A stretch of 64,000 bases of DNA, taken from positions 1 through 64,000 of the IMG/VR virus record IMGVR_UViG_3300019458_000020. One strand, 5' to 3'. The position numbers and the translations under genes were made by a program. Positions 20,289-58,126 of this stretch are shown here, piece by piece; within the stretch, counting starts at the first letter, position 1; every line of letters starts with the position of its first letter. The notes under the pieces were generated by a model that was given only the letters and a program-made list of their open reading frames with translations, had not been told where the DNA came from and ran no database searches.

Positions 20289-20296
20289 TATAAATA
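20289..20296 (-). promoter_or_regulatory. TATTTATA putative late promoter
   Basis: 18 nt upstream of ATG 20270. Confidence 0.6.
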
Positions 20297-32652: not shown

Positions 32653-32660
32653 TATAAATA
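32653..32660 (-). promoter_or_regulatory. TATTTATA putative late promoter
   Basis: 16 nt upstream of ATG 32636. Confidence 0.6.
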
Positions 32661-42499: not shown

Positions 42500-42507
42500 T
42501 ATAAATA
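42500..42507 (-). promoter_or_regulatory. TATTTATA putative late promoter
   Basis: 18 nt upstream of ATG 42481. Confidence 0.6.
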
Positions 42508-46166: not shown

Positions 46167-46658
46167 TTAAAACTGTAGTATGGCGTAGTCGTACGACAAA
46201 GTAAGTGTAATTCCGAGTGGGTCGCCATTGTTCGTCCAGTCTAGGGTCTGGAAATCGGCATTAGTGATGAATGCACCTTTCAATGTCCATTCCTCAACCT
46301 TATCACCGACTGGTCCAAGGACATTTATGGTTATGTCCTTTTTATAGAAATCTTGATATCCATCACGGCCAGTAACCGATTCGTGAGAAAGACGAATCCA
46401 TTCCATTACAGCTTGGGCACCGGATGGAACAACTGGGTCATAAAGTTCAGCAGTAATTTCGTTCCAAATCGTCTTTCCTTTGTAGTATCTTTGAAGGTTG
46501 ATGTGGTCGAGGGCCTTGCGTTCGCTAGTTGGCTTTGGTCGGTCACATTTCTTCAAAATGAACGATGGGATACCATCGACATACATGATGAAACGATTTT
46601 GTGTTTTTGTTTCGAAGGCCGTCCAGAATATCTCATTGGAATTTAGTAAATCTGCCAT
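46167..46658 (-). CDS. Tail tube protein (T4 gp19-like)
   Basis: NRF, RP, GK..W..IT..LYD, VMEW, YKKDI....L...G..VE.W.LKGAF, TL.YDY. Confidence 0.9.
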   Translation of the reverse strand: MADLLNSNEIFWTAFETKTQNRFIMYVDGIPSFILKKCDRPKPTSERKALDHINLQRYYKGKTIWNEITAELYDPVVPSGAQAVMEWIRLSHESVTGRDGYQDFYKKDITINVLGPVGDKVEEWTLKGAFITNADFQTLDWTNNGDPLGITLTLSYDYAILQF

Positions 46659-46698: not shown

Positions 46699-46706
46699 TA
46701 TAAATA
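46699..46706 (-). promoter_or_regulatory. TATTTATA putative late promoter
   Basis: 40 nt upstream of tube ATG 46658. Confidence 0.6.
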
Positions 46707-46782
46707 TACATCAAATAATAATTTGATTTTTTTTGTATTCGATTCTTAATTATTGTTACTGCGTTTGAACCAATGGATCAAT

Positions 46783-48339
46783 ATGAATAAAGAACCGATT
46801 ATTAAAAAATGTGAAGTCTGTGATAAGGATTATGAAATTCCACATCGAAAAAGGAGCAAAGCGTCTCAACGGAGATTTTGTTCTAAGTCATGTTCTAATA
46901 GAAGTCCCGATGTTTTAGAAAAAATACAACGTAACAAGTTACTTACATATAGGAAAAAATATGGCGTGGATCACCCAATGAAAACCAAAGAAGTTGTTTC
47001 TAATTTTAAGTCATCTATGAAGGAAAAATATGGGATAGAACATGCTTTACAGTCGTCGATTTTTTTACAAAAATCCAAAGATACTAAATTAGAAAAATAT
47101 AGTGATGAAAATTTTAATAATGTAGAAAAGATGAAAAAAACATGTTTGGATAAGTATGGTGTAGAAAATTATGTTTTAACAGATGAGTATAAGGAAAAAA
47201 CAAAACAGACTTGTTTAGAAAAATACAACGTAGAATTTCCTTCACAAGCAAATTCATATAAGGAAAAATACAAAAATACAATTTTTGATAGATTTTTATC
47301 ATCTGGAAGATTCGATAATTTTACTCCATTATTTGATATAAAAGAATACAACGGTGTTCTTAAAAATAAAAAATATGAATTTAAATGTGATAGATGTGAT
47401 CAGACAGTTTTGTGTAATTTAAATGATGGCAGGTTTCCATTTTGTTTCAAATGTGACAAAGATGACACTTCATACGGTCAAAAGGAAATATACGATTTCT
47501 TAAAAGAAGAATTGGGAAACGATGTAACAATTTTAACAAACGAACGAACTATTTTATATCCTAAAGAAATAGATATTTATATACCTTCATTAAAACTAGC
47601 CATCGAATTCAATGGAACATATTGGCATTGTGAATTAACAGGAAATAAAAATAAAACGTATCATCTTAATAAATCAAATAAATGTATATCTAAAGAAATT
47701 CGTTTACTTCATATTTTTGAATACCACTGGATAAAAAATAAAGAAATAGTGAAATCTATATTAAGAAATAAAATAAATGTTACAAAAAATAAAATATATG
47801 CTAGAAATTGTTTTATTAAATCCGTAGATATGCATGATTGTATCGAGTTTCTTGACAACAATCACATTCAGGGACGTGATAAAAGTAGTTTTAAATACGG
47901 ATTATACTATGATGATGAGTTAATATCCATTATGACTTTTTGTAAATCCAGATTTGATAAAAAATATGAATATGAAATGTCACGTTTTTGTAATAAATTA
48001 AATCTATCTGTGATTGGTGGATCATCCAAACTTTTTAGTTATTTTATTAACAACCAAAATCCAAAATCTATAGTGACATACTGTGATAGAAAATATTTTG
48101 ATGGTTCTGTTTATAGTAATTTAGGGTTCACCTTTGTAGGCCATACACCACCAAATTATTATTATGTTAATCAAGAACACACTGAATTATTTAATAGAAT
48201 GTCTTTTCAAAAACACAGACTCCAGAAAAAATTATTTTCCTTCGATAAAAATCTATCTGAGTGGCAAAATATGAAAAATAACGGATTTGATAGAATATGG
48301 GATTGTGGAAACTCTAAGTGGGTATGGAAGATAAATTAA
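46783..48339 (+). CDS. Hef-like homing endonuclease: Zn finger + KYG repeats + PD-(D/E)xK + GNAT-like C-terminal domain
   Basis: CEVC..FCSKSC; five KY(G/S/N) repeats; EIDIYIP...AIEFNGTYWH; FL..NHIQG, EMSRFC, TYCDR, IWDCG. Start moved to ATG 46783. Confidence 0.8.
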   Translation: MNKEPIIKKCEVCDKDYEIPHRKRSKASQRRFCSKSCSNRSPDVLEKIQRNKLLTYRKKYGVDHPMKTKEVVSNFKSSMKEKYGIEHALQSSIFLQKSKDTKLEKYSDENFNNVEKMKKTCLDKYGVENYVLTDEYKEKTKQTCLEKYNVEFPSQANSYKEKYKNTIFDRFLSSGRFDNFTPLFDIKEYNGVLKNKKYEFKCDRCDQTVLCNLNDGRFPFCFKCDKDDTSYGQKEIYDFLKEELGNDVTILTNERTILYPKEIDIYIPSLKLAIEFNGTYWHCELTGNKNKTYHLNKSNKCISKEIRLLHIFEYHWIKNKEIVKSILRNKINVTKNKIYARNCFIKSVDMHDCIEFLDNNHIQGRDKSSFKYGLYYDDELISIMTFCKSRFDKKYEYEMSRFCNKLNLSVIGGSSKLFSYFINNQNPKSIVTYCDRKYFDGSVYSNLGFTFVGHTPPNYYYVNQEHTELFNRMSFQKHRLQKKLFSFDKNLSEWQNMKNNGFDRIWDCGNSKWVWKIN

Positions 48340-50357
48340 ATCTTTTGGTCAATAAAGACCTCCAAGTGGTCAAGGGCATATCCTTTTGATAATCGGTTTG
48401 GATTCATTCCTTGAGATTTTGCATCCGTGGCCATCTTATGTAATTCCTTCTTGAACGCTTCCCTAAAGGTTGCCATATCGGTTTTAACCCACTCATTTTT
48501 TCTATCTAACACGTTTTCTTCCTTAACGTGACTTCCGAGATGATGCCAAATCGGTCCACTATAAGAGAATTTCTTTCGATAGTCGTTATTGTATAAGAAT
48601 GATGTATATTTTTCATCATAATCTATATCATCGTCATCATTGAATCCTTTATTTTTCCTTGAAAATGACCACGCACCGTTTGGTTTGTCTGTCATCGATA
48701 GATAGTCAGGGTGTTTGTTTGTTATTACATTTCCATTCTTGTCTCTGATGTAAGTAATTCTTTGTCTCTGACCCTTTCCTCGTTTCTTTGGGTCAACAAA
48801 TTCACTACCACCTAACAACAATTTTTCAATATACGGCCAGACAAAAGCGTAAATTCCCCTCTTCGATGGAGGTCCATGAAATGTGGTAGGCGGTCCTTTG
48901 TATCCTTTTTGTTTTGTTAAACTAAGACCACCAAAAGTAACAAACTCCATTTTTTTATCTTTAAATGGATTATGTTTTCCTTCAGCAACTTTTCTACCCC
49001 ACGTTATGTATGGGTCATGCATTCTAAATTTATCCATATCTGACATGTGCATTGACGAACGGTGTTTTACTATATTTTTACCTGTTTTTGTTTTAATCCA
49101 ATCTGACACTGAATCTTTTACATCGGAACTTGGATTTCCCCACCAAAAAATAAAATCAGAGTCTTCTCTCCATCTATCATCATTCCTATTATATCCTGGA
49201 ACCTGCTGATGCGTCATAGTTTCACTATCTGATGATATAGCTTTTACATGTAAATCATCATCAACTAGACCAATCCATATACGTGTTCCTTTTGATTCTT
49301 TGTAAAATGATTTTTTGTATTCTGGATGTTTTAAATCAAATGCAGCATCTTTTGGATGTGGAATTAAATACTCTTCCGGAGTATATTTTTTCTTTATGGT
49401 TTTTGAATATTTAGGGTTTTCTTCTCCTGATAAATTAAACTGAACGATGGTAGGGTCAAGGACTGTTCCATCTTTTAATTCTATCCAAGTATGTTGATGT
49501 CTTCCTTGTCTAATAATATAACCTTCTACAACCCAAAAATCTTTCATACCCCTTTTTATTGCCTCTTCTGAAAATACTTTAGTAAATTCCATACAAACAC
49601 CAGATTTATCACAGTGTAATTTATCAGAGACTTCTTTAGCTAAATCGGTGTAATTTTTTTTTAAATCTACTGATTCTTTTAATGTAACTTCTTTATCATA
49701 TAACTGATTAGTTGCATCTTTTAATCTCTTTAAGTCACCAAAATTACGAAGAGCTTTAAACACAATGTTTTCGTTACTAAATTCCCCCTCTTTATTAAGT
49801 CCAGATTCACGATAAGCGGTTATTGATTTCATTAATGATTTCAATTTATCAACATCTTCCGTCTCGATAAATTTTGTTATTTGATCTTTTAACTGATGAT
49901 ACTTCTTTTTAATTTTTTCTTTATCTAATTCTATGTTTTCTCTTTTTGGTTCCTGTATCCATTCATCATGTAAAATAGAATAGATTCCTATGGATCTATT
50001 TGTGTCAGCAATATCTTGAAGATACACTTCAACTTTATGACCTTTAATGTCAATATTTTGGTGTTGAGTATTCCACTTAAAACCAAAATTATCCATTATC
50101 TTTCTTAGGTATTCTGGATTTATTTTCTCCTTGGAAGCATCAACTAATATATGAAGGTCTATATCACTTGTTGGGGTCCAGTTATAATTTGCTGCCGAAC
50201 CTAAAAAGTAAATATCTTGAATACCACCTTTAAGGTCCGTGGAATCATAAAAGTCCTTGGAGATTTTTAATAATCGTTTGCGAATCTCCGGTTTGAGTTT
50301 CATATCCTCATTCCAAAGATTCGGGTCTAACGTTTTATTGTAAACCCTAAGTTTCAT
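48336..50357 (-). CDS. Multidomain protein: Pol-beta-type nucleotidyltransferase + papain/transglutaminase-like domain + two unknown domains
   Basis: GSAANYNW...SDIDLH...EVY.QD; GVC..F...VEG...HTWIE..DG...DPT..QF; junctions at LKE, YKE and VAE. Confidence 0.75.
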   Translation of the reverse strand: MKLRVYNKTLDPNLWNEDMKLKPEIRKRLLKISKDFYDSTDLKGGIQDIYFLGSAANYNWTPTSDIDLHILVDASKEKINPEYLRKIMDNFGFKWNTQHQNIDIKGHKVEVYLQDIADTNRSIGIYSILHDEWIQEPKRENIELDKEKIKKKYHQLKDQITKFIETEDVDKLKSLMKSITAYRESGLNKEGEFSNENIVFKALRNFGDLKRLKDATNQLYDKEVTLKESVDLKKNYTDLAKEVSDKLHCDKSGVCMEFTKVFSEEAIKRGMKDFWVVEGYIIRQGRHQHTWIELKDGTVLDPTIVQFNLSGEENPKYSKTIKKKYTPEEYLIPHPKDAAFDLKHPEYKKSFYKESKGTRIWIGLVDDDLHVKAISSDSETMTHQQVPGYNRNDDRWREDSDFIFWWGNPSSDVKDSVSDWIKTKTGKNIVKHRSSMHMSDMDKFRMHDPYITWGRKVAEGKHNPFKDKKMEFVTFGGLSLTKQKGYKGPPTTFHGPPSKRGIYAFVWPYIEKLLLGGSEFVDPKKRGKGQRQRITYIRDKNGNVITNKHPDYLSMTDKPNGAWSFSRKNKGFNDDDDIDYDEKYTSFLYNNDYRKKFSYSGPIWHHLGSHVKEENVLDRKNEWVKTDMATFREAFKKELHKMATDAKSQGMNPNRLSKGYALDHLEVFIDQKI

Positions 50358-50365
50358 TAACTTTA

Positions 50366-51310
50366 TTATTGAACACCTAAATAGCGTTCTGCATTAGCTA
50401 ATGACTCTTCATGACACGATGGGCAAAGAGTAGAAGATGTACCTGGATTTATTTTCTTTCCACATTTCATACATTTTCCGGTTTTTATAGCCAGTTTAAC
50501 CTTTTCTTGATGGTCATCTTTTTTATCTTCCTGAAGTTCATTATGCATTTTCAGTAATTCATCTGATAGTTTCTTAATCAATTCTAAATCTTGAATCACT
50601 GCTTGTTTACGATGAATACCTACCTGAGCAACACGATTTATATCTTTTATCAAATTAATTTCATGTTTTTCACTGTAACCATGTTCTTGTTCATGATCTT
50701 CGTTAATTATTTCACATAAAATACTAAGAATGTTTTCTTTTAATTTTGATGTAATTTCATCAGGCTTGCTACTAATACCATATTCTTTTCCCTTTGGCTG
50801 GGCACCCCAATAATGTAATTTTCCATGTTCTTCATTAACCGGAATGATATTAAGTTGTGGGTGTTTGGATTGAATTGCATCCATTTTTGTAGGATGTTGT
50901 GTAAATATCATTGCATCCTCTACTGATGGTTCATAACCTTTTTTAGTCAAATATTTACCATCTAATTTTCTTTGAACAATGTAATTCTCTCCACTTATTT
51001 CATTTTCCATTAAACCTAATTCTTTTTTACCATACATGGATGCGTATGCCGATTTTAGATCAACAGGAGAAGGTTTACCATCTATACGAAAATTTTTATT
51101 ATCTAATGGAACGTTATTTCTGACTTCAGGTTTCCCATCAGGCATTTGAACCGTAACGGTTGCTGTCTTTCCATCTTTACTGGGTTCGATGGTTAAAACC
51201 TTAAATGTTTTTGGTTGAAGACCTGTGGTCACGAGGGTTATCTTTGAATAGGTTTGTACACCCTTTGTATCCTTATCACCGCCACTTGTTATTTGAGATG
51301 TAGATATCAT
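50366..51310 (-). CDS. Hypothetical multidomain protein with C-terminal Zn ribbon
   Basis: LME, VNE, LKENILSILCEIINE and LQE sites; CMKC..CPSC. Confidence 0.65.
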   Translation of the reverse strand: MISTSQITSGGDKDTKGVQTYSKITLVTTGLQPKTFKVLTIEPSKDGKTATVTVQMPDGKPEVRNNVPLDNKNFRIDGKPSPVDLKSAYASMYGKKELGLMENEISGENYIVQRKLDGKYLTKKGYEPSVEDAMIFTQHPTKMDAIQSKHPQLNIIPVNEEHGKLHYWGAQPKGKEYGISSKPDEITSKLKENILSILCEIINEDHEQEHGYSEKHEINLIKDINRVAQVGIHRKQAVIQDLELIKKLSDELLKMHNELQEDKKDDHQEKVKLAIKTGKCMKCGKKINPGTSSTLCPSCHEESLANAERYLGVQ

Positions 51311-51810
51311 ACGTATTGACTTAAAATTTTTATTGTTTCTCGGGCAGACTTATGCAATATGCCGGTGCCACCCTTGTTATTCCATTCAGTAATAACGACC
51401 TCTGTATCATCTATAATTATATCTCCAGGCCTCGAATACTCTTGTTTTTTATGTTTGTTTGCAACTAAAATGATGTCCGATTCTCTGAGATTAGGTATAT
51501 TTTTTCTTAACCAACTATGTTTACCTCTATAAACCCCATTATTCCTTTCATTCTCCTTCCCCATAGCACTTAATATTTTAACAATCATGAAGTTAGAATA
51601 AATATAATTCCACATATCCTTGGAATAAGGCAACCATTCTAATTCCGAAAAAAACCTTTCTACCCCATGTTTTCGTATTTGAACCCATATAGGGTCATCA
51701 TCGTTAAAATAATAATTCATTCTTTTTCCGGTAGTTTTTTCTACACCGGAGTCGAAGTCTGCTAAGACTCCATCCATATCGACATAAATAATTTTATTAA
51801 CATCACTCAT
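51307..51810 (-). CDS. HAD-family 5'(3')-deoxyribonucleotidase-like protein
   Basis: YVDMDGVLADF, FF..L, ILSA, K..W, IIIDD, W...GG.GILH. Confidence 0.88.
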   Translation of the reverse strand: MSDVNKIIYVDMDGVLADFDSGVEKTTGKRMNYYFNDDDPIWVQIRKHGVERFFSELEWLPYSKDMWNYIYSNFMIVKILSAMGKENERNNGVYRGKHSWLRKNIPNLRESDIILVANKHKKQEYSRPGDIIIDDTEVVITEWNNKGGTGILHKSARETIKILSQYV

Positions 51811-51813
51811 GAG

Positions 51814-51821
51814 TATAAATA
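51814..51821 (-). promoter_or_regulatory. TATTTATA putative late promoter
   Basis: 3 nt upstream of ATG 51810. Confidence 0.5.
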
Positions 51822-51842
51822 TAAAGAAAGATATATAAGAAA

Positions 51843-51871
51843 TTGACGGAAGTTTTTTTGTTCTGTACTTT
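51843..51871 (+). promoter_or_regulatory. Sigma70-type promoter with no downstream sense ORF
   Basis: TTGACG-17 nt-TACTTT pointing into a GC-rich non-coding element. Confidence 0.5.
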
Positions 51872-51994
51872 AGAGCGTCGAGCGAAACAATGAGCGATAG
51901 CGAAGTGAAGCGACGGGCTCGATAGATACAATAAAGAAATAATTAGTACTGATCTTAAAAGATCAAGAATAAAGTACTTTAAAAGTACAGTACT
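51872..51994. other. Non-coding AGCG-repeat and palindrome element (candidate origin/primosome site or small RNA)
   Basis: Five AGCG in 39 nt; TCGAGC/GCTCGA and CGTCG/CGACG inverted pairs; TGATCTT-AA-AAGATCA; GTACTTT-A-AAAGTAC; three AGTACT. Confidence 0.45.
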
Positions 51995-52197
51995 CAGTAA
52001 GGATGTATCCTCACAGGATTTTTTAAAATCTTACTTCCGATTTGTCGAACAAATGATGGATACTCTTTAGAGTCAATTTCTGTCCATGCGTGGGATGCAC
52101 TCCAGGGTTGTCCGTAGTCATGCCCACTAGAAACATGCGACAGATTTTCGTCATCATATTCTACAAAAACCGGCGTTATATCAGATGATTTTTTCAT
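51994..52197 (-). CDS. Small hypothetical protein
   Basis: 67 aa; late motif upstream. Confidence 0.55.
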   Translation of the reverse strand: MKKSSDITPVFVEYDDENLSHVSSGHDYGQPWSASHAWTEIDSKEYPSFVRQIGSKILKNPVRIHPY

Positions 52198-52211
52198 AAA
52201 CTCTCATCTAA

Positions 52212-52219
52212 TATAAATA
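52212..52219 (-). promoter_or_regulatory. TATTTATA putative late promoter
   Basis: 14 nt upstream of ATG 52197. Confidence 0.55.
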
Positions 52220-52245
52220 TCAGGAAATAAAACCAATCGAAGAAC

Positions 52246-52869
52246 TTAATAGGTAAATTTCTTAAAAACAGAATACGGTTTATTCAAAGCTTTTAAGGCA
52301 ATTTCTACTTCTTTAAGACATTCATTTATTCCTCCACCTGTCAAAACAATATTGTTATATTGTTTCAAAAAATCCATCAAATCAGGAATATGAACACAGT
52401 CGGCCGCTGCCTGTAATAATGTATAAACTTCTTTCTTATCTATACGTCTATACTGTCTTAAATATTTTGCCCACATTTCTCTATCCATATCTCGTGAATC
52501 ACGAATGTTATTTTCATACATGAATCTTACAAAGTTAGCGACAGAATCTTCATCAATACTGTTATCCATACAATACCTAAAGAAAGCATAACCCTTATCG
52601 TAGAAAATTGAGGTATCTAAAACACTTTCGTCTAAAGCGTTGTCTAATAACCACGTCTTATAGTCTTGTTCGGACACCATTCCCATTGTGTCTTCTCCAT
52701 TATACAAGAAAATAATTTTGTAAGCTTCGTTATCTATACTGTTTAACCACTCACACCATTCGTGAGGTTTAAAAAATATTCCACCTTCATATTCTGGTTG
52801 AATATCAACATTCATTATAACTTTTCCCGAAAAAGATTCTTCTATTATAATGGATTTAAGAGAAGTCAT
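52246..52869 (-). CDS. Isochorismatase/nicotinamidase-like cysteine hydrolase fold protein with short leader
   Basis: IMNVDIQPEY and VLTGGGINECL; probable start MTSLKSIIIEE at 52869 (track start 52887). Confidence 0.55.
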   Translation of the reverse strand: MTSLKSIIIEESFSGKVIMNVDIQPEYEGGIFFKPHEWCEWLNSIDNEAYKIIFLYNGEDTMGMVSEQDYKTWLLDNALDESVLDTSIFYDKGYAFFRYCMDNSIDEDSVANFVRFMYENNIRDSRDMDREMWAKYLRQYRRIDKKEVYTLLQAAADCVHIPDLMDFLKQYNNIVLTGGGINECLKEVEIALKALNKPYSVFKKFTY

Positions 52870-53350
52870 TATAATTTTTTCCCTCATTATTTAAATCAAT
52901 GATTCTTTTTATTTCATTACCAGAATGTTGAATCAATGCTTTTAATCCAAAATGTAATGGATGTGGCCATTGTCCATATTCTACCCATTTATATTTGTCC
53001 GTTTCCCAATTTAAACGGGGGTCAAATTCGTCATCAACAATGGCCAAAAAATTATGATATTTAAATCCAGATTGTTTATCTTCATAAACATAAAGAGGAA
53101 TAAGTTTTTCAATGATTCCTCTATATCCTACTTCTTCAGTGGCTTCTCTTTTTACAGCCTTAGCAGGATTTTCACCTGAATCTATAGCGCCGCCCCACAC
53201 TCCCCAAGTCCCTGGTTGTAACACCATCATAGAACGGAGTGGTAACAATAACCTACCAGTGGTTTTCGCCATAAAAATACATCCAGCACCCTGTTTTCCC
53301 CAGAATCCGGTTCTTGATAAGGCACCACCATGTAGTTCGTCGTTACTCAT
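52856..53350 (-). CDS. Nudix hydrolase
   Basis: Nudix box GGAIDSGENPAKAVKREATEEVG. Confidence 0.92.
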   Translation of the reverse strand: MSNDELHGGALSRTGFWGKQGAGCIFMAKTTGRLLLPLRSMMVLQPGTWGVWGGAIDSGENPAKAVKREATEEVGYRGIIEKLIPLYVYEDKQSGFKYHNFLAIVDDEFDPRLNWETDKYKWVEYGQWPHPLHFGLKALIQHSGNEIKRIIDLNNEGKNYNDFS

Positions 53351-53352
53351 AA

Positions 53353-54732
53353 TTAAACATCTTCTATTTTTGTAACCCTATTCCAAGGTATTATATCACA
53401 GGAATAAATTTCATATCCTACACCAGAAGAATATAATTCCAATCCTTCGGTATTTATAGTTAAAATAACAAGAGGTTCATCCTCGTCAAATTTATCAGAA
53501 AGCCAGTTCATCAAGGCATCTTCAAGTGAAGCTCTATCATCAAAGAGATACACAGCTTTTGAACAAAATTTGGCAGGTCTATCGGGTTTAGGCAATATAC
53601 CATTAATTTTCATATTTGGTATATTCTTTTTTGGGGTTACATGATATACCACTTTAGGTTGAACAGTGATATTTTCTGCCACTAAATCTTTCCAACTACC
53701 AACCACATCTTGATCCCAATATAACACTTCAATTATATTTTTGTGTTTAAAAAATGGATGATTATAAATAAACTCTTCTGTCTTGGGATTATGATGTAGG
53801 GTGGATTCTTTTGTATCGTCTGTAACAAGAAGAGAAACATTATCACCCTCCACATACACCAACAAACAAACATAATTGTTATCTACCTTGTTTTTTAAGA
53901 ATTTCCTGACTTGATAATGATATGCTTTATCTCTATCCCAACCATAAGCATTGTTACCACTTAAAATTAATCCATATTGGTCATATTTAGTTATTTCTTT
54001 TATTTCTCTTGGTGTAGGATTTATAAAAACTTCTACATAATCCGACTTACCTGCTAAATTACTTTCAAATGAATCAAGAAATTTTTCTGATATGGTTCCA
54101 GTATTTACTATTCCCTTAGCCTGATAATCTCTTATGTCATCTAACGTAGATTCACCACCCTCAACGAACCAATGAGCCATAGAACCTAATCCATGAATAA
54201 AATTTAAAAGTTGGTCTATTTTTAAGAGTTGGCCTTCCGGAGTGTGTTCCAATTCCACAGATTTAGCCATTTTATATAATGTTCTACTTCTATCGCTGTA
54301 TCTTCCGTTCCCACCGGAACCAATTTCACCAAAATTTCTAACTAACTTAGAACCAGATTTATCTGAAATAAAAGTGAACCATCTTTCCCATTCTTCCTCG
54401 GTAATATCTTTATAATTCTCCTTTTCAAAGAAGCTATCTGCTAATACACCATCTTTTATATCACTGTTTATAAATAACTTAGATATCAAAACTCTTAAAA
54501 TATCCCATATCTTTTTTAAGGAAGATTCATCTACACGTCCATATTTTGCAAACTTCGCCCATATTAATTTTAAGTCTCTAGCAGGTACAAGTTTCCAAGA
54601 CTGATGTTTTTGACCAGAATGAAATTCAGACTTAACATCTTCTAAGATATCAATCCAATCATCATCGATAGTAGCATGTATTGATTCAACAATACATTTA
54701 TCTATTATCTTTTGAAGTTTTGATACTTTCAT
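53353..54732 (-). CDS. Multidomain protein with leader and C-terminal ADP-ribosyltransferase-fold (Tpt1/KptA-like) domain
   Basis: MKVSKLQKIIDKCIVE; junctions ISE and VAE; VYHVT...N.....NGILP...VYL...E...IP. Confidence 0.65.
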   Translation of the reverse strand: MKVSKLQKIIDKCIVESIHATIDDDWIDILEDVKSEFHSGQKHQSWKLVPARDLKLIWAKFAKYGRVDESSLKKIWDILRVLISKLFINSDIKDGVLADSFFEKENYKDITEEEWERWFTFISDKSGSKLVRNFGEIGSGGNGRYSDRSRTLYKMAKSVELEHTPEGQLLKIDQLLNFIHGLGSMAHWFVEGGESTLDDIRDYQAKGIVNTGTISEKFLDSFESNLAGKSDYVEVFINPTPREIKEITKYDQYGLILSGNNAYGWDRDKAYHYQVRKFLKNKVDNNYVCLLVYVEGDNVSLLVTDDTKESTLHHNPKTEEFIYNHPFFKHKNIIEVLYWDQDVVGSWKDLVAENITVQPKVVYHVTPKKNIPNMKINGILPKPDRPAKFCSKAVYLFDDRASLEDALMNWLSDKFDEDEPLVILTINTEGLELYSSGVGYEIYSCDIIPWNRVTKIEDV

Positions 54733-54737
54733 ACCTA

Positions 54738-54745
54738 AATAAATA
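54738..54745 (-). promoter_or_regulatory. TATTTATT putative late promoter
   Basis: 5 nt upstream of ATG 54732. Confidence 0.55.
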
Positions 54746-54780
54746 TCAATTTCTAAAACGTTTATTTACGAGAATTTGCC

Positions 54781-54898: not shown

Positions 54899-57800
54899 TT
54901 ATGCATTCGGGAAAGACGCACCGCTTGGAAGTACATTAAAATCAAGAACAATGAATTCTGCGGTTCTCGTTGGCTTAATGAAAATCTGACCATAGAGAAT
55001 GTTTCTATCAACAATGTCGGCTGTGTTGTTTTCTTCATCCATTTTAACGAAGAAAGCAAACAAACCAGAACGTTGTTGAACCGATTCCATGTAAGGGTTA
55101 ACAATGCTCAAGAATTTGTTTCTAGTAGCAGCTGTATTTTGTTCAAATACCAAGAATTTCGATGTAGAAGCGATAAACTTCTTCAAGTTAATCAACAATC
55201 TACGAACGTTAATTCTATCCAAAGCAGATGCATCGTTTTGTAGAGTCTTTTGACCCCAAACAACAACACCTTGACCTGGGAAGGCAGCAATTGGATTAAC
55301 CTTACCATCATACAGAGTGTCACGTTCTTCGTGAGTAGTTCTATCAGTTACCTGAATTGCCGTTGGGATACCACCACGGTTCAAACCAGCAGGAGCGAAC
55401 CATTCAGCAGCAACCTTGTCGTTAGCAGCATAAACTGCTGGAAGAACAACAGATGGAGGAACCGTTACAACTTTGTTAGTGTTTGTATCAAGGATTTTAA
55501 CCCAAGGATAATAAGCACCGGCGTAGTTGGTATCGTAAGCGGCAGCGTCAGACACAACTTCATCAATCTGACCGGCTGTTGGATTTCCATCATCAACATA
55601 CAAATCCATGATGAAGAAACAATCTCCACGAGCTTCACACATATCAACAACACGTCCGGTGACGTATGGGTGATGTTGGTGAACAATACCTGGAACCACA
55701 ATTAAGTTAATATCGAATTCATCGGAATTTCCTAAAGCGGTGATTGCTTGGTTATAAGCAACCGAACCAGCAGATGAAACCGTAGTACAATCTAATCCTT
55801 GGGTGTTACCAGGTATAATATCTCCACCCACATTAATTGCTGTGGCTGGTGATTGACCATCGAAACCACCTTGGAAACCAACAATGAATTTACGCATCTT
55901 GACGTAAGTGGATTCGTTAGCAGCATCGAATTCGGATGGTACAACGTTACTTCCACTTAGGAAAGAACCAATACCAACACCACCGATTCTGTAATCGTCA
56001 TCCAAAGCGAACGGAATGTTTCTTCCGATAGAACCGTAAGAACCAAACTCAGGCAATGGAGCAAAATATTCCTTATTATCGTCAGATGAACCAATTCCGG
56101 TTGAAGAAGTTGGATACAATCCAGCGAGTTCTACGTCCGCTCCGGTAGGAGCATCATCAAACGTCACGCCGGACGGATATTTGCCAGGATTTAGACCATA
56201 GACTGAAGCTTTGGTGTACTTCATAGCAGGAATCCAATGTCCAGCGCTAGAATTCATAGGAACTGTTAGAGCTTCGAATCCGTAAGGAATTGCTGTTTCA
56301 GGAAGAACCGAATCAGACATTTCGATACGAATATGTTTGCTGTTGTTGGAATACGTTCCAAATTCAATAATCTTACCCTTGAAATCAATGTAATCATATC
56401 TATCACCAATTCTACGAGCAATAAAGTTTGAAGAATTTGGGTCAAGATTTAAGTTATTGAATTGTTCAAGAACAACCGGACGTTTATCGGTATCACTCCA
56501 CCTTCTCAAAGTAAGAGTGAATGAACCCCAATCACTTCCAGGAACAGTTCCAGCCAATTTTACGTTACTAATTTCAATCTTGAACTGTTTGTTCATGATT
56601 GTTCCATCAGCTAACGTATGAACACGGAACAAACGGAATCTCGTTGGGTCTTGACCGGACTGCCAAGGAGCAATCTTTTGTGATAAGAACCAAGGAGTGA
56701 TAGCGTTAGTAATAGAAAATTCACTGTCTCCATTTGTCAAATCATCACTGAATTCATCGGTGAAGTTGAGTGGATCACCGGTGAATTGAGAAGCGTCTGG
56801 AAGAGCACTTCCAGAAACAAACCACTCGGTTCTATTACCATAAATTTCTGCAATAGCATTATTGAACACTTTATACAAGTAAGCAGCCTCAATTTTTTGA
56901 CCAGTCACTTGTAAGTCAGGGTCACCGACAGCAGCATTTAATCCGAATACATTCGTGATATATTTATTACTGGATGGGTTCAATGAGAATTGATATGTTC
57001 CAATAGTAGTCGAACTGTTACTGTTTTTCAACGTTAAGTTGAAATCGGAAGTGATATCCGAAGCATTAGTGTTTGCACTAGCGGTGATTAGTGAAGAATT
57101 CAAGAATCCCGGAGCAATTAAATCATTTATTCCACCAAACAAGGTATCATTCAATACTGCTAAGACTCTCAAATCCACAGTTGAACCGGATGACCACAAG
57201 TTTGTGCAAGGATCGAATGTTGGTTGACCATTTGGTGTGAAGTTACCATTGTATCTACCAAACGAACCGGATAGAACACCAGCCAATTGAATTGTTGGAG
57301 TTCCACAAGAACCAGTCGAAGTATAGAACGAACCACTGATTAGGTGAATAGATAAGAACGGAGCCGCACCACCGTTGTTGAAATTCAACGTCACATCATT
57401 AGCGAAAGAACCTGAAAATGTTCCGGCTGCAATTGAAGCAGAAATACTTGAACCAGTGTACCATGAGGCCGAAGGAGACGTTAATGTAGTAAAGCCCAAA
57501 CTAATGGTTTGTCCAGAATACAATACAGAACCACTTTGAGACGTTTTTGATAATAATGCGTTGTCCGCTGCTTGAGATTGGAACGTTACTGTTACCGATG
57601 CTGAATTCATCGTTAATATATTTGATGAGATGGAAACGCTTTGACTAAATTGTGCTCCGATAGAACCAGATAGAGTAATAAATGAACTACCTGATATTAA
57701 AGCACCAGCAGAACCGTGACGATTCCAAGTTCCTTTTACTGCCCAAAGAACAAATGGGTAATTTTGTTTATATCCAGTCAAACCACCTACACGACACACC

Positions 57801-58069
57801 GTTACAAGACCACGTTCTTTAAGGTATTCAGCGGCAGTATAAGGACCGTAATATACACCATCCGGAACACCGAATTGAGCTTGAAGTTCATTAATATCGG
57901 TAATTAGCTTAGGTGAAAATGCCGGACCTTTTGCGAATGGTGCCACAACAACGGCACCAATGTCAGCAACACCTTGTGCAATACCTGATTGGTCATTCTC
58001 ACGGGTAAATACACCAGGACTCACTATTCTGTCAACTGGACTAAATCTTCCACCTTCTTGGATCGGCAT
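54899..58069 (-). CDS. Contractile tail sheath protein (T4 gp18-like)
   Basis: SPGVFTREND, YYPWV, WFAPAGLNRG, LY...VNPI..FPG.G..VWGQKTL, RINVRRLL, FEQN, I.IKP.RTAEFI. Confidence 0.96.
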   Translation of the reverse strand: MPIQEGGRFSPVDRIVSPGVFTRENDQSGIAQGVADIGAVVVAPFAKGPAFSPKLITDINELQAQFGVPDGVYYGPYTAAEYLKERGLVTVCRVGGLTGYKQNYPFVLWAVKGTWNRHGSAGALISGSSFITLSGSIGAQFSQSVSISSNILTMNSASVTVTFQSQAADNALLSKTSQSGSVLYSGQTISLGFTTLTSPSASWYTGSSISASIAAGTFSGSFANDVTLNFNNGGAAPFLSIHLISGSFYTSTGSCGTPTIQLAGVLSGSFGRYNGNFTPNGQPTFDPCTNLWSSGSTVDLRVLAVLNDTLFGGINDLIAPGFLNSSLITASANTNASDITSDFNLTLKNSNSSTTIGTYQFSLNPSSNKYITNVFGLNAAVGDPDLQVTGQKIEAAYLYKVFNNAIAEIYGNRTEWFVSGSALPDASQFTGDPLNFTDEFSDDLTNGDSEFSITNAITPWFLSQKIAPWQSGQDPTRFRLFRVHTLADGTIMNKQFKIEISNVKLAGTVPGSDWGSFTLTLRRWSDTDKRPVVLEQFNNLNLDPNSSNFIARRIGDRYDYIDFKGKIIEFGTYSNNSKHIRIEMSDSVLPETAIPYGFEALTVPMNSSAGHWIPAMKYTKASVYGLNPGKYPSGVTFDDAPTGADVELAGLYPTSSTGIGSSDDNKEYFAPLPEFGSYGSIGRNIPFALDDDYRIGGVGIGSFLSGSNVVPSEFDAANESTYVKMRKFIVGFQGGFDGQSPATAINVGGDIIPGNTQGLDCTTVSSAGSVAYNQAITALGNSDEFDINLIVVPGIVHQHHPYVTGRVVDMCEARGDCFFIMDLYVDDGNPTAGQIDEVVSDAAAYDTNYAGAYYPWVKILDTNTNKVVTVPPSVVLPAVYAANDKVAAEWFAPAGLNRGGIPTAIQVTDRTTHEERDTLYDGKVNPIAAFPGQGVVVWGQKTLQNDASALDRINVRRLLINLKKFIASTSKFLVFEQNTAATRNKFLSIVNPYMESVQQRSGLFAFFVKMDEENNTADIVDRNILYGQIFIKPTRTAEFIVLDFNVLPSGASFPNA

Positions 58070-58118: not shown

Positions 58119-58126
58119 TATAAATA
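58119..58126 (-). promoter_or_regulatory. TATTTATA putative late promoter
   Basis: 49 nt upstream of sheath ATG 58069. Confidence 0.6.

What the first reader, a model, noticed from the sequence alone, without database searches (positions are those of the whole stretch)
48336..54732. Polyprotein-like genes whose domains are joined at x-x-E protease-type sites
Seen: in the 673-aa ORF, apparent domain changes fall at TLKE/S (nucleotidyltransferase to Cys-His-Asp papain/transglutaminase-like), FYKE/S and KVAE/G. In the 459-aa ORF they fall at CIVE/S, TISE/K and LVAE/N (to the ART-like domain). The 314-aa ORF has LME, VNE, INE and LQE at similar breaks. Established: polyvalent proteins of phages concatenate such enzymatic domains, and prohead proteases cut after Glu. 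Inference: beads-on-a-string cargo is packaged as one chain and released as separate effectors during head maturation. Boundaries were judged by eye.
Basis: partly seen in the sequence, partly recalled or inferred. Interest (0 to 1): 0.7.

Follow-up and report, generated by a model that had tools for sequence, protein, structure and literature searches.

The report
Phage enzyme cassettes joined by protease sites
Between the tail sheath and tail tube genes of a T4-like jumbo phage lie modular multi-enzyme genes whose modules are joined by short hydrophobic-x-Glu linkers; these match the cutting motif of the phage's own head-maturation protease, so the proteins are probably head-packaged cargo cut into separate enzymes, though no protein data exist yet.

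Summary
The ORFs and all listed x-x-E sites exist. For the 673-aa and 459-aa ORFs, the six sites lie exactly at module ends, as shown by module shuffling in homologues and by low-confidence linkers in AlphaFold models.

Inside the window alone the enrichment is weak (p 0.04 and 0.12). Across homologues it is strong:
- 103 of 122 fused homologues have Glu at the last position of the nucleotidyltransferase (NTase) module. Proteins that end at that point often stop just before it.
- An orthologue in a related phage lacks the 126-aa module 2 exactly between the two "KE|S" joints.
- The domain of the 213-aa ORF is free-standing here behind a 10-aa leader, but fused behind "LTE" elsewhere.

The genome encodes a T4 gp21-type prohead protease, whose published motif is L/I-x-E. 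A 10-aa leader, MIKLKxIIxE, sits on at least 11 unrelated ORFs and mirrors the T4 capsid targeting sequence.

Best reading (confidence 0.55): these are head-packaged polyvalent cargo proteins cut at leader and junction sites. Cleavage and packaging are inferred. The 673-aa and 314-aa ORFs lack a leader, and the 314-aa sites are poorly tested. I rate this a new variant of a known kind.

The parts
53353..54732 (-). 459-aa modular protein: leader (residues 1-16), module A (17-216), module B (217-353), ART-like module C (354-459)
54685..54732 (-). 16-aa N-terminal leader MKVSKLQKIIDKCIVE, ending I-V-E. It resembles the T4 capsid targeting sequence, and homologues carry 9-17-aa leaders ending IFE/ILE/LFE/VLE/IGE.
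   Evidence: T4 CTS literature
54085..54087 (-). Glu216 codon (TISE|K), the joint between modules A and B. This Glu is invariant in 10 homologues whose downstream modules differ.
53674..53676 (-). Glu353 codon (LVAE|N), the joint before the ART-like module. Homologues that lack module C end 2-3 residues before this Glu.
53356..53673 (-). Module C, ART-like (YHVT ... VYLF ... YEI). It also occurs as ~110-aa stand-alone proteins and behind a leader in the genome's own 705-aa ORF.
   Evidence: no Pfam hit
52856..53350 (-). NUDIX hydrolase, 164 aa. Its orthologue in a related phage carries a 90-aa N-terminal extension joined by VVGE|S.
52246..52887 (-). 213-aa ORF. From its second Met it has the 10-aa leader MTSLKSIIIE. 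Residues 14-213 are 58% identical to the C-terminal half of P0009, where the domain is fused behind module A.
51307..51810 (-). NT5C-type 5' nucleotidase, 167 aa, with no leader. It is the first gene of the apparent operon NT5C-314-673.
50366..51310 (-). 314-aa ORF of unknown function with a C-terminal CxxC...CxxC zinc ribbon. Its x-x-E sites are at 102, 160, 204 and 261; only E160 and E261 sit at edges of conserved blocks.
49674..50357 (-). 673-aa ORF module 1 (residues 1-228): Pol-beta-fold nucleotidyltransferase plus helical domain, ending TLKE228
49296..49673 (-). 673-aa ORF module 2 (residues 229-354): an orphan 126-aa cassette with a Cys...His...Asp order, ending FYKE354. It is absent from the 547-aa orthologue, which reads TLKE|S straight into module 3.
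48981..49295 (-). 673-aa ORF module 3 (residues 355-459): a small alpha/beta module that recurs in homologues, often in tandem, and always lies a few residues after a hydrophobic-x-E. It ends KVAE459.
48339..48980 (-). 673-aa ORF module 4 (residues 460-673): unknown fold. It is stand-alone in P0052, behind the short leader MKVMIE.
46753..48339 (+). Homing endonuclease (phrog_3339/559, DUF7487) on the opposite strand. It is absent from the syntenic locus of the related phage.
54739..54746 (-). ATATTTAT motif 6 nt upstream of the 459-aa ORF. The same ATATTTATA motif precedes the sheath, tube, portal and NT5C genes, so it may be a late promoter element.
54899..58069 (-). Tail sheath gene, upstream border of the island
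46167..46658 (-). Tail tube (gp19-like) gene, downstream border of the island. In T4 the sheath and tube genes (18 and 19) are adjacent.

Best explanation
The ~8-kb insert between the tail sheath and tail tube genes is an island of enzyme cassettes. The 459-aa and 673-aa ORFs are polyvalent-type proteins built from independently mobile modules:
- 459-aa ORF: module A, module B and an ART-like module.
- 673-aa ORF: nucleotidyltransferase, a Cys-His-Asp cassette, a small adaptor-like module and a C-terminal module of unknown fold.

Each module is separated from the next by a short unstructured linker ending in hydrophobic-x-Glu. That is the recognition motif of T4 gp21-type prohead proteases, and this phage encodes one (genome 103364-103990). 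The 459-aa and 213-aa proteins also begin with short leaders ending I-x-E, built like the T4 capsid targeting sequence.

Most likely mechanism, all inferred:
1. The genes are expressed late, together with the structural genes.
2. The proteins are loaded into the prohead core through the leader; for the 673-aa protein the route is unknown.
3. The prohead protease removes the leader and cuts the inter-module joints during head maturation.
4. The freed enzymes stay with the DNA and enter the host at infection, where they act in host takeover or counter-defence.

Shown here: the module boundaries, conservation of the joint motif across homologues, recurrence of the leader, and the protease gene. 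Inferred: targeting, cleavage, retention in the head, injection and the enzyme targets.
For: (2) C-terminal joint of the NTase module. P1 is Glu in 103 and Asp in 10 of 122 fused homologues, and conservation stops abruptly after P1. In proteins that end there, Glu is present in only 4 of 11, and several stop 1-2 residues earlier (Fisher p=0.001). One example is S-CRM01 g125, which ends ...SLSL.

(3) N-terminal flank of internal NTase modules. A hydrophobic-x-E lies within 7 aa in 25 of 41 cases, against 9.6% of random windows.

(4) All 9 homologues have [VLMI]-x-E two residues before module 4, including the stand-alone form.

(5) The 547-aa orthologue in a syntenic locus lacks module 2 exactly between the two KE|S joints. 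Homologues of the 459-aa ORF that lack the ART module end just before the Glu.

(6) The domain of the 213-aa ORF is either free behind the leader ...IIIE|ES or fused behind ...LTE...IRE|ES. The genome's own 726-aa ORF uses LIKLKEIIYE|S as an internal joint.

(7) A Peptidase_S77 protease is present, 30% identical to T4 gp21, with the GELDHP and SSRGLG motifs. The T4 motif is L/I-X-E, the capsid targeting sequence is 10-19 aa, and its processing determinants are at residues 8 and 10 (PMC9026906). The T4 sequence is MKTYQEFIAE (PMC8442874).

(8) The leader core I[KR]L[KSN]x[IL][ILV]xE occurs 8 times in the proteome, 7 of them directly after a start Met, against 0.026 expected. It varies at synonymous sites. 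It is conserved in Microcystis phage Mel-JY01 (4 copies) and Flavobacterium phage immuto (1 copy), with 0 in reversed-pattern controls.

(9) Leader-bearing ORFs include a PARP-like ART and a GNAT-lysozyme fusion. Others sit at the gp67/gp68 position between the portal and protease genes.

(10) S77 is found in 11 of 18 IMG/VR records that carry NTase homologues, including both complete ones.

(11) An ATATTTATA motif is shared with the sheath, tube and portal genes.
Against: - There is no protein-level evidence of cleavage or of presence in virions.
- The 673-aa and 314-aa ORFs lack any leader, and most N-terminal NTase homologues start directly at the domain.
- The motif is only three residues long and also occurs inside folded parts: 673-aa ORF E136, E278, E613; 459-aa ORF E31, E69, E112, E246, E335.
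- FYKE has Tyr at P3, and two sites have Val rather than Leu or Ile.
- In a more distant NTase subfamily the Glu sits one residue earlier (LS[IL]E[SN]), and some stand-alone forms keep the Glu.
- The neighbouring NUDIX and NT5C genes look like ordinary nucleotide-metabolism genes, and stand-alone NTase homologues in cyanophage S-CRM01 sit among replication genes.
- P4 and P3 in the joint logo were constrained by my search pattern.
Confidence: 0.55

Rival explanations
1. The proteins are ordinary uncleaved multidomain enzymes. On this view the hydrophobic-x-Glu at the joints is a structural end-cap of the modules, or a linker preference that survives domain shuffling, and has nothing to do with proteolysis or packaging.
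For: - The Glu is kept in some stand-alone NTase proteins.
- The S/T-hydrophobic residues before it belong to the conserved end of the domain.
- There is no leader on the 673-aa and 314-aa ORFs.
- Enrichment within the window alone is weak.
- NUDIX and NT5C neighbours and the non-structural context in S-CRM01.
Against: - The Glu is markedly more frequent when a further module follows, and proteins that end there often stop just before it.
- The same motif flanks unrelated modules on both sides: NTase, module 3, module 4, the ART-like module, the 213-aa ORF domain and NUDIX.
- The N-terminal leader and the internal joint are interchangeable.
Confidence: 0.25
2. The joints are cut by the prohead protease, but in the cytoplasm late in infection. 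The products then act in the producing cell rather than being packaged and injected.
For: T4 gp21 cuts I/LxE, and more weakly xxE, in disordered loops of a cytosolic host CD-NTase in vivo and when expressed alone (PMC12991175). The 673-aa and 314-aa ORFs lack a targeting leader.
Against: The 459-aa and 213-aa ORFs carry leaders built like the T4 capsid targeting sequence, and the same leader heads ORFs at the prohead-core position. The island sits among virion genes and shares their upstream motif. No benefit of late cytoplasmic processing is apparent.
Confidence: 0.12
3. The 673-aa protein processes itself through its Cys-His-Asp module 2, a papain/transglutaminase-like peptidase, as proposed for the embedded peptidases of polyvalent proteins.
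For: Module 2 has Cys255 at the start of a predicted helix, then His289 and Asp301 on or after strands. Iyer et al. propose autoproteolysis for polyvalent proteins (PMC5512222).
Against: Module 2 is an orphan with no homologues and no Pfam support, and it is absent from the orthologue, which keeps the joints. The joint motif is present in more than 100 homologues that lack any such module.
Confidence: 0.04
4. The x-x-E sites are chance matches in Glu-, Ile- and Leu-rich proteins, picked by eye.
For: [LIVM]xE occurs once per ~60 residues in this proteome. Fisher tests within the window proteins give p=0.04 and 0.12.
Against: Position-specific conservation across hundreds of homologues with different architectures, and the exact cassette insertion between two KE|S joints.
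Confidence: 0.03

Closest known systems
T4 internal proteins IPI-III and Alt, with their capsid targeting sequence and gp21 processing
   Same: Short N-terminal leader of 10-19 aa with a hydrophobic residue at position 8 and Glu at position 10. The leader is shared by unrelated proteins of one phage. A gp21-family protease is present. The cargo includes an ADP-ribosyltransferase-type enzyme. Cleavage after L/I-x-E is the proposed processing step.
   Different: The leader sequence is different (MIKLKxIIxE against MKTYQEFIAE). The cargo here is multi-module, with the same motif at every internal joint, so several enzymes would be released from one chain. T4 internal proteins are cut once and Alt at its two ends. 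Nothing has been shown experimentally here.
Polyvalent proteins of phages and conjugative elements (Iyer et al. 2017, PMC5512222)
   Same: Several unrelated enzymatic domains (NTase, ART, GNAT, ParB-like, lysozyme in this genome) in one polypeptide, encoded among virion genes. One NTase homologue (P0138, 1822 aa) carries the Pfam ART-PolyVal domain.
   Different: That paper proposes processing by embedded metallopeptidases and describes no joint motif. Here no embedded metallopeptidase, MuF or DarA-N anchor was seen. The NTase family is not the minimal Pol-beta NTase that the paper found in conjugative elements.
Ejection and inner-body proteins of phiKZ, 201phi2-1 and SPN3US, cut by their prohead proteases
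   Same: Giant-phage head cargo cut after Glu at a three-residue motif by a gp21-related protease. Some of these proteins are cut at several sites (PMC5694885).
   Different: The motif there is A/S/G-x-E, with long propeptides that are discarded. Those proteins are not described as strings of independently mobile enzyme modules, and the phage lineage is different.
Viral polyproteins of eukaryotic RNA viruses
   Same: One translation product is cut at short conserved sites between functional units by a virus-encoded protease.
   Different: The protease is unrelated. The proposed cutting here takes place inside an assembling capsid, and the products are accessory effectors rather than replication or structural proteins.

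Membership tests
T4-type capsid-targeted internal proteins (CTS cargo) | N-terminal propeptide of about 10-19 residues ending in L/I-x-E | tested here: met
   459-aa ORF: 16 aa ending I-V-E. 213-aa ORF from Met7: 10 aa ending I-I-E. Not met for the 673-aa and 314-aa ORFs, which have no leader.
T4-type capsid-targeted internal proteins (CTS cargo) | The same leader is shared by otherwise unrelated proteins of the phage | tested here: met
   At least 11 ORFs carry MI[KR]L[KSN]x[IL][ILV]xE-type leaders, against 0.026 expected. A second leader type, K..IIKECIxE, sits on 4 more ORFs.
T4-type capsid-targeted internal proteins (CTS cargo) | The phage encodes a gp21-family (Peptidase_S77) prohead protease | tested here: met
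   Genome 103364-103990: 80 bits against a cut-off of 27, and 30% identity to T4 gp21 with the His and Ser motifs.
T4-type capsid-targeted internal proteins (CTS cargo) | The protein is found in the head, with the leader removed at the Glu | not testable with these tools
   Needs virion N-terminomics. No proteome exists for this uncultured phage.
Polyvalent proteins (Iyer et al. 2017) | Two to fifteen distinct, independently occurring domains in one polypeptide of a phage or conjugative element | tested here: met
   Four modules in the 673-aa ORF and three in the 459-aa ORF. Each is found with other partners or alone.
Polyvalent proteins (Iyer et al. 2017) | [quoted passage not shown] | tested here: met
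   The island lies between the sheath and tube genes, and the locus is syntenic in a related phage.
Polyvalent proteins (Iyer et al. 2017) | Typical anchor or processing domains (MuF, portal fusion, DarA-N, zincin metallopeptidase) | tested here: not met
   No such Pfam or PHROG hits in the three ORFs. The only link is that the NUDIX neighbour matches a portal-NUDIX PHROG profile.
Pol-beta superfamily nucleotidyltransferase (NTP_transf_2) | Pfam match above the cut-off and a G[SG]...DxD catalytic motif | tested here: met
   PF01909 at 24.1 bits against 21. G53, S54, D65 and D67 are invariant or nearly so. Foldseek best hits are AAD(9)/AadA adenylyltransferases.
ADP-ribosyltransferase superfamily (module C of the 459-aa ORF) | ART fold with an H-Y-E-type triad | tested here: inconclusive
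   The YHVT, VYLF and YEI motifs were found by eye. Atlas look-alikes are Arr-ms, PARP, DUF952 and PTS_2-RNA with TM 0.68-0.85. There is no Pfam hit, and model pLDDT is about 60.
Papain/transglutaminase-like cysteine peptidase fold (module 2 of the 673-aa ORF) | Cys at a helix N-terminus followed by His and Asp on a beta-sheet, or an HMM match | tested here: inconclusive
   The order Cys255 (before helix 256-268), His289, Asp301 fits. However, pLDDT is below 50-65, there is no Pfam hit and there are no homologues.

The most novel reading that the evidence does not exclude
A general cassette grammar may exist in T4-like and jumbo phages. On this reading, thousands of effector domains are flanked on both sides by the cutting motif of the prohead protease; the NTase family alone has 4203 relatives. 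An N-terminal targeting leader and an internal joint would then be the same interchangeable element. The head-maturation protease would double as a polyprotein-processing enzyme, and new injected enzymes could be added simply by inserting a cassette at a Glu|Ser joint, as module 2 was here.
Probability: 0.4. Interest if true: 0.8.

Novelty: new variant of a known kind. Interest (0 to 1): 0.68.

Why it matters
If true, three things follow:
- The content of injected protein arsenals could be predicted from sequence alone (leader plus joints) in uncultured jumbo phages.
- It would explain how such arsenals evolve by cassette insertion.
- It would link polyvalent proteins to the prohead protease rather than to embedded peptidases.

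It would also give a second, unrelated capsid targeting leader that could be used for protein packaging in phages of Bacteroidota or cyanobacteria. The idea is directly testable, because cultured relatives (Microcystis phage Mel-JY01, Flavobacterium phage immuto) carry the same leader.

Tried and rejected
- A megablast search of the locus against cultured phages found nothing. A tblastn search with the 459-aa ORF against cultured phages also found nothing.
- A Foldseek search of the 459-aa model against the PDB gave no meaningful match; the model is multi-domain with mean pLDDT 61.
- A word-based homologue search for module 2 (residues 229-354) found only the protein itself.
- Pfam scans of each module on its own at E up to 10 gave nothing credible.
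- An Atlas search for module 4 gave no usable hit. For module A it gave only a weak PcfJ-like lead, score 0.84.
- I suspected that S-CRM01 g124 was a free-standing relative of module 2. BLASTP found no alignment.
- The T4 late promoter TATAAATA was sought on the coding strand. Matches lie mostly on the opposite strand, which led to the ATATTTATA motif instead.
- I considered a DNA-level origin of the leaders, such as a repeated promoter or recombination cassette. I rejected it because the leaders differ at synonymous sites and the upstream DNA is not conserved.
- No complex prediction of protease with substrate was sent. A transient enzyme-peptide contact is outside what that test can judge.
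- No alternative genetic code was needed or used.
Full report
**Setting.** The window is the first 64 kb of a 250.8-kb IMG/VR virus record, estimated 74% complete, with about 34% GC. The same proteins also occur on a 340.9-kb contig. The genome has T4-type head genes:
- a major capsid protein 28% identical to T4 gp23;
- a portal with the Portal_T4 domain;
- a Peptidase_S77 prohead protease 30% identical to T4 gp21, with the GELDHP and SSRGLG motifs.

The nearest cultured relatives by capsid protein (about 54% identity) are Microcystis phage Mel-JY01 and Flavobacterium phage immuto.

The finding lies between the tail sheath gene (54899-58069) and the tail tube gene (46167-46658). These two genes are adjacent in T4. 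Here about 8 kb lies between them. On the minus strand it holds the 459-aa ORF, a NUDIX hydrolase, a 213-aa ORF, a 67-aa ORF, an NT5C nucleotidase, the 314-aa ORF and the 673-aa ORF. On the plus strand it holds a homing endonuclease. A related phage contig has the same island without the endonuclease and without the 213-aa ORF.

*673-aa ORF.* A profile-free search of 1.84 billion representative proteins gave 4203 relatives. Their local match boundaries cut the query into four modules:
- module 1, residues 1-228 (nucleotidyltransferase, NTase);
- module 2, residues 229-354;
- module 3, residues 355 to about 450;
- module 4, residues 460-673.

The NTase is found at the start, middle or end of proteins 216-1822 aa long. 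Module 3 is often in tandem copies. Module 4 also occurs alone, in P0052. AlphaFold2 models the NTase at pLDDT above 90, with its last helix at 208-224 and coil at 225-232. Confidence drops below 50 at 282-356 and 447-462, so E228, E354 and E459 all sit between folded units.

*459-aa ORF.* Ten homologues share module A (residues 17-216), and Glu216 is invariant. Different modules follow it in different homologues. The model has pLDDT below 50 at 1-20, 202-240 and 340-389, which covers E16, E216 and E353.

*314-aa ORF.* Only two homologues exist. E160 and E261 lie at edges of conserved blocks; after E261 one homologue has an insertion of about 75 aa and the other a deletion. E102 is ambiguous. 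E204 lies inside a conserved stretch.

**Is it more than chance?** Within the window proteins alone, hardly. [LIVM]xE occurs once per about 60 residues in this proteome. The enrichment in linkers gives p=0.04 and 0.12, and similar motifs sit inside folded parts. The weight of evidence comes from relatives.

- *C-terminal end of the NTase module.* Among 122 fused homologues, the position two residues after the conserved S/T-hydrophobic pair is Glu in 103 and Asp in 10. Nothing is conserved after it. Note that P4 and P3 were fixed by my search pattern; P2, P1 and the primed positions were not.
- *Proteins that end at this point.* Only 4 of 11 have the Glu, and several stop one or two residues before it (Fisher p=0.001). 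The stand-alone NTase of cyanophage S-CRM01 ends ...SLSL. An independent IMG/VR sample shows the same trend less crisply. It also contains a distant subfamily in which the Glu sits one residue earlier.
- *N-terminal side of internal NTase modules.* In 25 of 41 cases a hydrophobic-x-E precedes the module within 7 residues, typically ...SIAE|E before KIRIYN. Only 9.6% of random windows have this.
- *Module 4.* All nine homologues have [VLMI]-x-E two residues before K[HFY][DN]PF. This includes the stand-alone form, which starts MKVMIE.
- *The ART-like module.* Hydrophobic-x-E precedes it in four contexts: twice after module B, once after a GIY-YIG domain, and once after a leader in the genome's own 705-aa ORF.

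**Three natural experiments.**

1. The orthologue of the 673-aa ORF in the syntenic locus is 547 aa long and 60-68% identical. It reads ...TLKE|STGGSKIW..., running straight from the NTase into module 3. The window protein has the 126-aa module 2 inserted exactly at that joint, and both new joints read KE|S.

2. Homologues of the 459-aa ORF that lack the ART module end two or three residues before the Glu. The three that have a downstream module all keep hydrophobic-x-E.

3. The domain of the 213-aa ORF is free-standing here, behind MTSLKSIIIE|ES. It is 58% identical to the C-terminal half of P0009, where it is fused behind module A through ...KLTE...IRE|ES.

Two further cases point the same way. 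The NUDIX orthologue in the related phage has a 90-aa N-terminal extension joined by VVGE|S, at the point where the window's NUDIX begins. The genome's own 726-aa ORF (GNAT, module-3-like, CCA-type NTase/HD) uses LIKLKEIIYE|S as an internal joint. So leaders and internal joints appear to be the same element.

**The leader.**
- The 459-aa ORF starts MKVSKLQKIIDKCIVE|S. Its homologues have leaders of 9-17 aa ending IFE, ILE, LFE, VLE or IGE.
- Genome-wide, a 10-aa leader MI[KR]L[KSN]x[IL][ILV]xE heads at least 11 otherwise unrelated ORFs. Its core occurs 8 times in 78,316 residues against 0.026 expected, and 7 of the 8 follow a start Met.
- The leaders differ at synonymous sites and have unrelated upstream DNA, so the constraint is on the peptide.
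- The DNA pattern for the leader finds 4 gene starts in Mel-JY01 and 1 match in immuto, none in T4, and none with the reversed pattern. Three of the Mel-JY01 matches coincide with annotated CDS starts.
- The leader has the geometry of the T4 capsid targeting sequence MKTYQEFIAE (PMC8442874): ten residues, hydrophobic at position 8, Glu at position 10. Those two positions are the ones shown to govern processing in T4 (PMC9026906).
- Leader-bearing ORFs include a PARP-like ADP-ribosyltransferase and a GNAT-lysozyme fusion. Two others lie between the portal and protease genes, where T4 has the prohead-core genes 67 and 68.

**Link to the protease.** T4 gp21 cuts after Glu in L/I-X-E (PMC9026906) and cuts xxE more weakly (PMC12991175). 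The related proteases of phiKZ and SPN3US cut after A/S/G-X-E (PMC5694885). Of 18 IMG/VR records that carry NTase relatives, 11 have an S77 protease, including both complete ones; the rest are fragments. The capsid protein of this phage has LLE52 and IDE61 close to the position equivalent to the T4 cut at Glu65. This is consistent with the model but does not discriminate.

An ATATTTATA motif lies 4-50 nt upstream of the sheath, tube, portal and NT5C genes, and with one mismatch upstream of the 459-aa ORF. That suggests co-expression with virion genes. It is only a motif match in AT-rich DNA.

**What the modules are.**
- Module 1 is a Pol-beta-fold nucleotidyltransferase with a helical domain, closest in fold to aminoglycoside adenylyltransferases. 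Its GS...DxD motif is conserved.
- Module C of the 459-aa ORF resembles ART-clan proteins, at the level of a lead only.
- Module 2 has a Cys-His-Asp order compatible with a papain-like fold, but nothing else supports this.
- Modules 3, 4, A and B are of unknown function.
- One NTase relative carries the Pfam ART-PolyVal domain, which ties the family to the polyvalent proteins of Iyer et al. (PMC5512222).

**Explanation and limits.** The best reading is that these are head-packaged polyvalent cargo proteins cut by the prohead protease at the leader and at the inter-module joints. Cleavage, packaging and injection are all inferred. The main weaknesses are:
- the missing leader on the 673-aa and 314-aa ORFs;
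- the shortness of the motif;
- the partial retention of the Glu in stand-alone forms.

Because gp21 can cut cytosolic proteins, processing without packaging remains possible. I found no paper describing a joint motif in polyvalent proteins or this leader. That literature search was limited.

**Verdict.** I rate it a new variant of a known kind: T4-type capsid-targeted cargo combined with polyvalent proteins.

Noticed in passing
G000:C1 72646-76512 (+), 83933-87123 (-), 103987-105473 (-), 111204-112160 (-), 176251-177015 (-), all outside the window: At least 11 ORFs start with the 10-aa leader MI[KR]L[KSN]x[IL][ILV]xE. A second leader type (K..IIKECIxE) heads ORFs at 65907, 66265, 105000 and 157279. 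The first type is conserved in Microcystis phage Mel-JY01 (60276, 60923, 62056, 62733) and Flavobacterium phage immuto (24569).
   Followed up: yes
window 46753-48339 (+): A 528-aa homing endonuclease (phrog_3339/559, DUF7487) sits on the opposite strand between the tube gene and the 673-aa ORF, overlapping the 673-aa ORF's stop by 4 nt. It is absent from the syntenic locus L097, so it is probably a recent insertion.
   Followed up: partly
window 58119-58126, 51814-51821, 46699-46706, 42500-42507, 32653-32660, 20289-20296 (plus-strand TATAAATA, which reads TATTTATA on the coding minus strand): An ATATTTATA motif lies 4-50 nt upstream of many minus-strand structural genes. It is a candidate late promoter element that differs from the T4 TATAAATA in orientation. 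TATAAATA has 20 matches in the window against 9.5 expected.
   Followed up: partly
G000:C1 70469-72649 (+): A 726-aa polyvalent ORF: GNAT, a module-3-like domain, and a CCA-adding-type nucleotidyltransferase with an HD domain. A leader-like decapeptide (LIKLKEIIYE) serves as an internal joint, and KLNE|G precedes the last module.
   Followed up: partly
G000:C1 85006-87123 (-): A 705-aa ORF: leader MIKLSSILNE, an ART-like module related to module C, a ParB-like motif (...IIDGGHRLAAA...) followed by SLTE|D, and a C-terminal SWIM-like CxC...CxH zinc finger.
   Followed up: partly
homologues P0031, P0035, P0038, P0043, P0044, P0048, P0050, P0059, P0062, P0075: In about 10 NTase relatives, P1 of the C-terminal joint is Asp rather than Glu. 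In these it is always followed by a conserved [GAC]FDP[TC]SxGPN motif. This is a distinct kind of joint of unknown meaning; in T4, Asp at the equivalent position of the targeting sequence blocks processing.
   Followed up: no
G000:C1 106420-109539 (-): The portal protein is 1039 aa, but the Portal_T4 domain covers only about residues 445-830. It therefore carries large N- and C-terminal extensions of unknown content.
   Followed up: no
G000:C1 88047-88634 (+), next to the capsid gene 88680-90395 (-): A GIY-YIG-type ORF (...GVYKITNIVNGMFYIGSS...) lies directly beside the major capsid gene. This recalls segD next to gene 23 in T4.
   Followed up: no
L060 / G010:C1 18327-18686 and G014:C1 43555-44004: In two IMG/VR jumbo-phage records the S77 protease domain lies in open frames of 678 and 663 aa. 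In G010 it is within 3 kb of the NTase gene. These may be protease fusion proteins.
   Followed up: no
window 54899-58069 (-): The tail sheath is 1056 aa, against 659 aa in T4. Only the last ~310 residues match sheath profiles, and the rest is Ser/Thr/Gly-rich.
   Followed up: no
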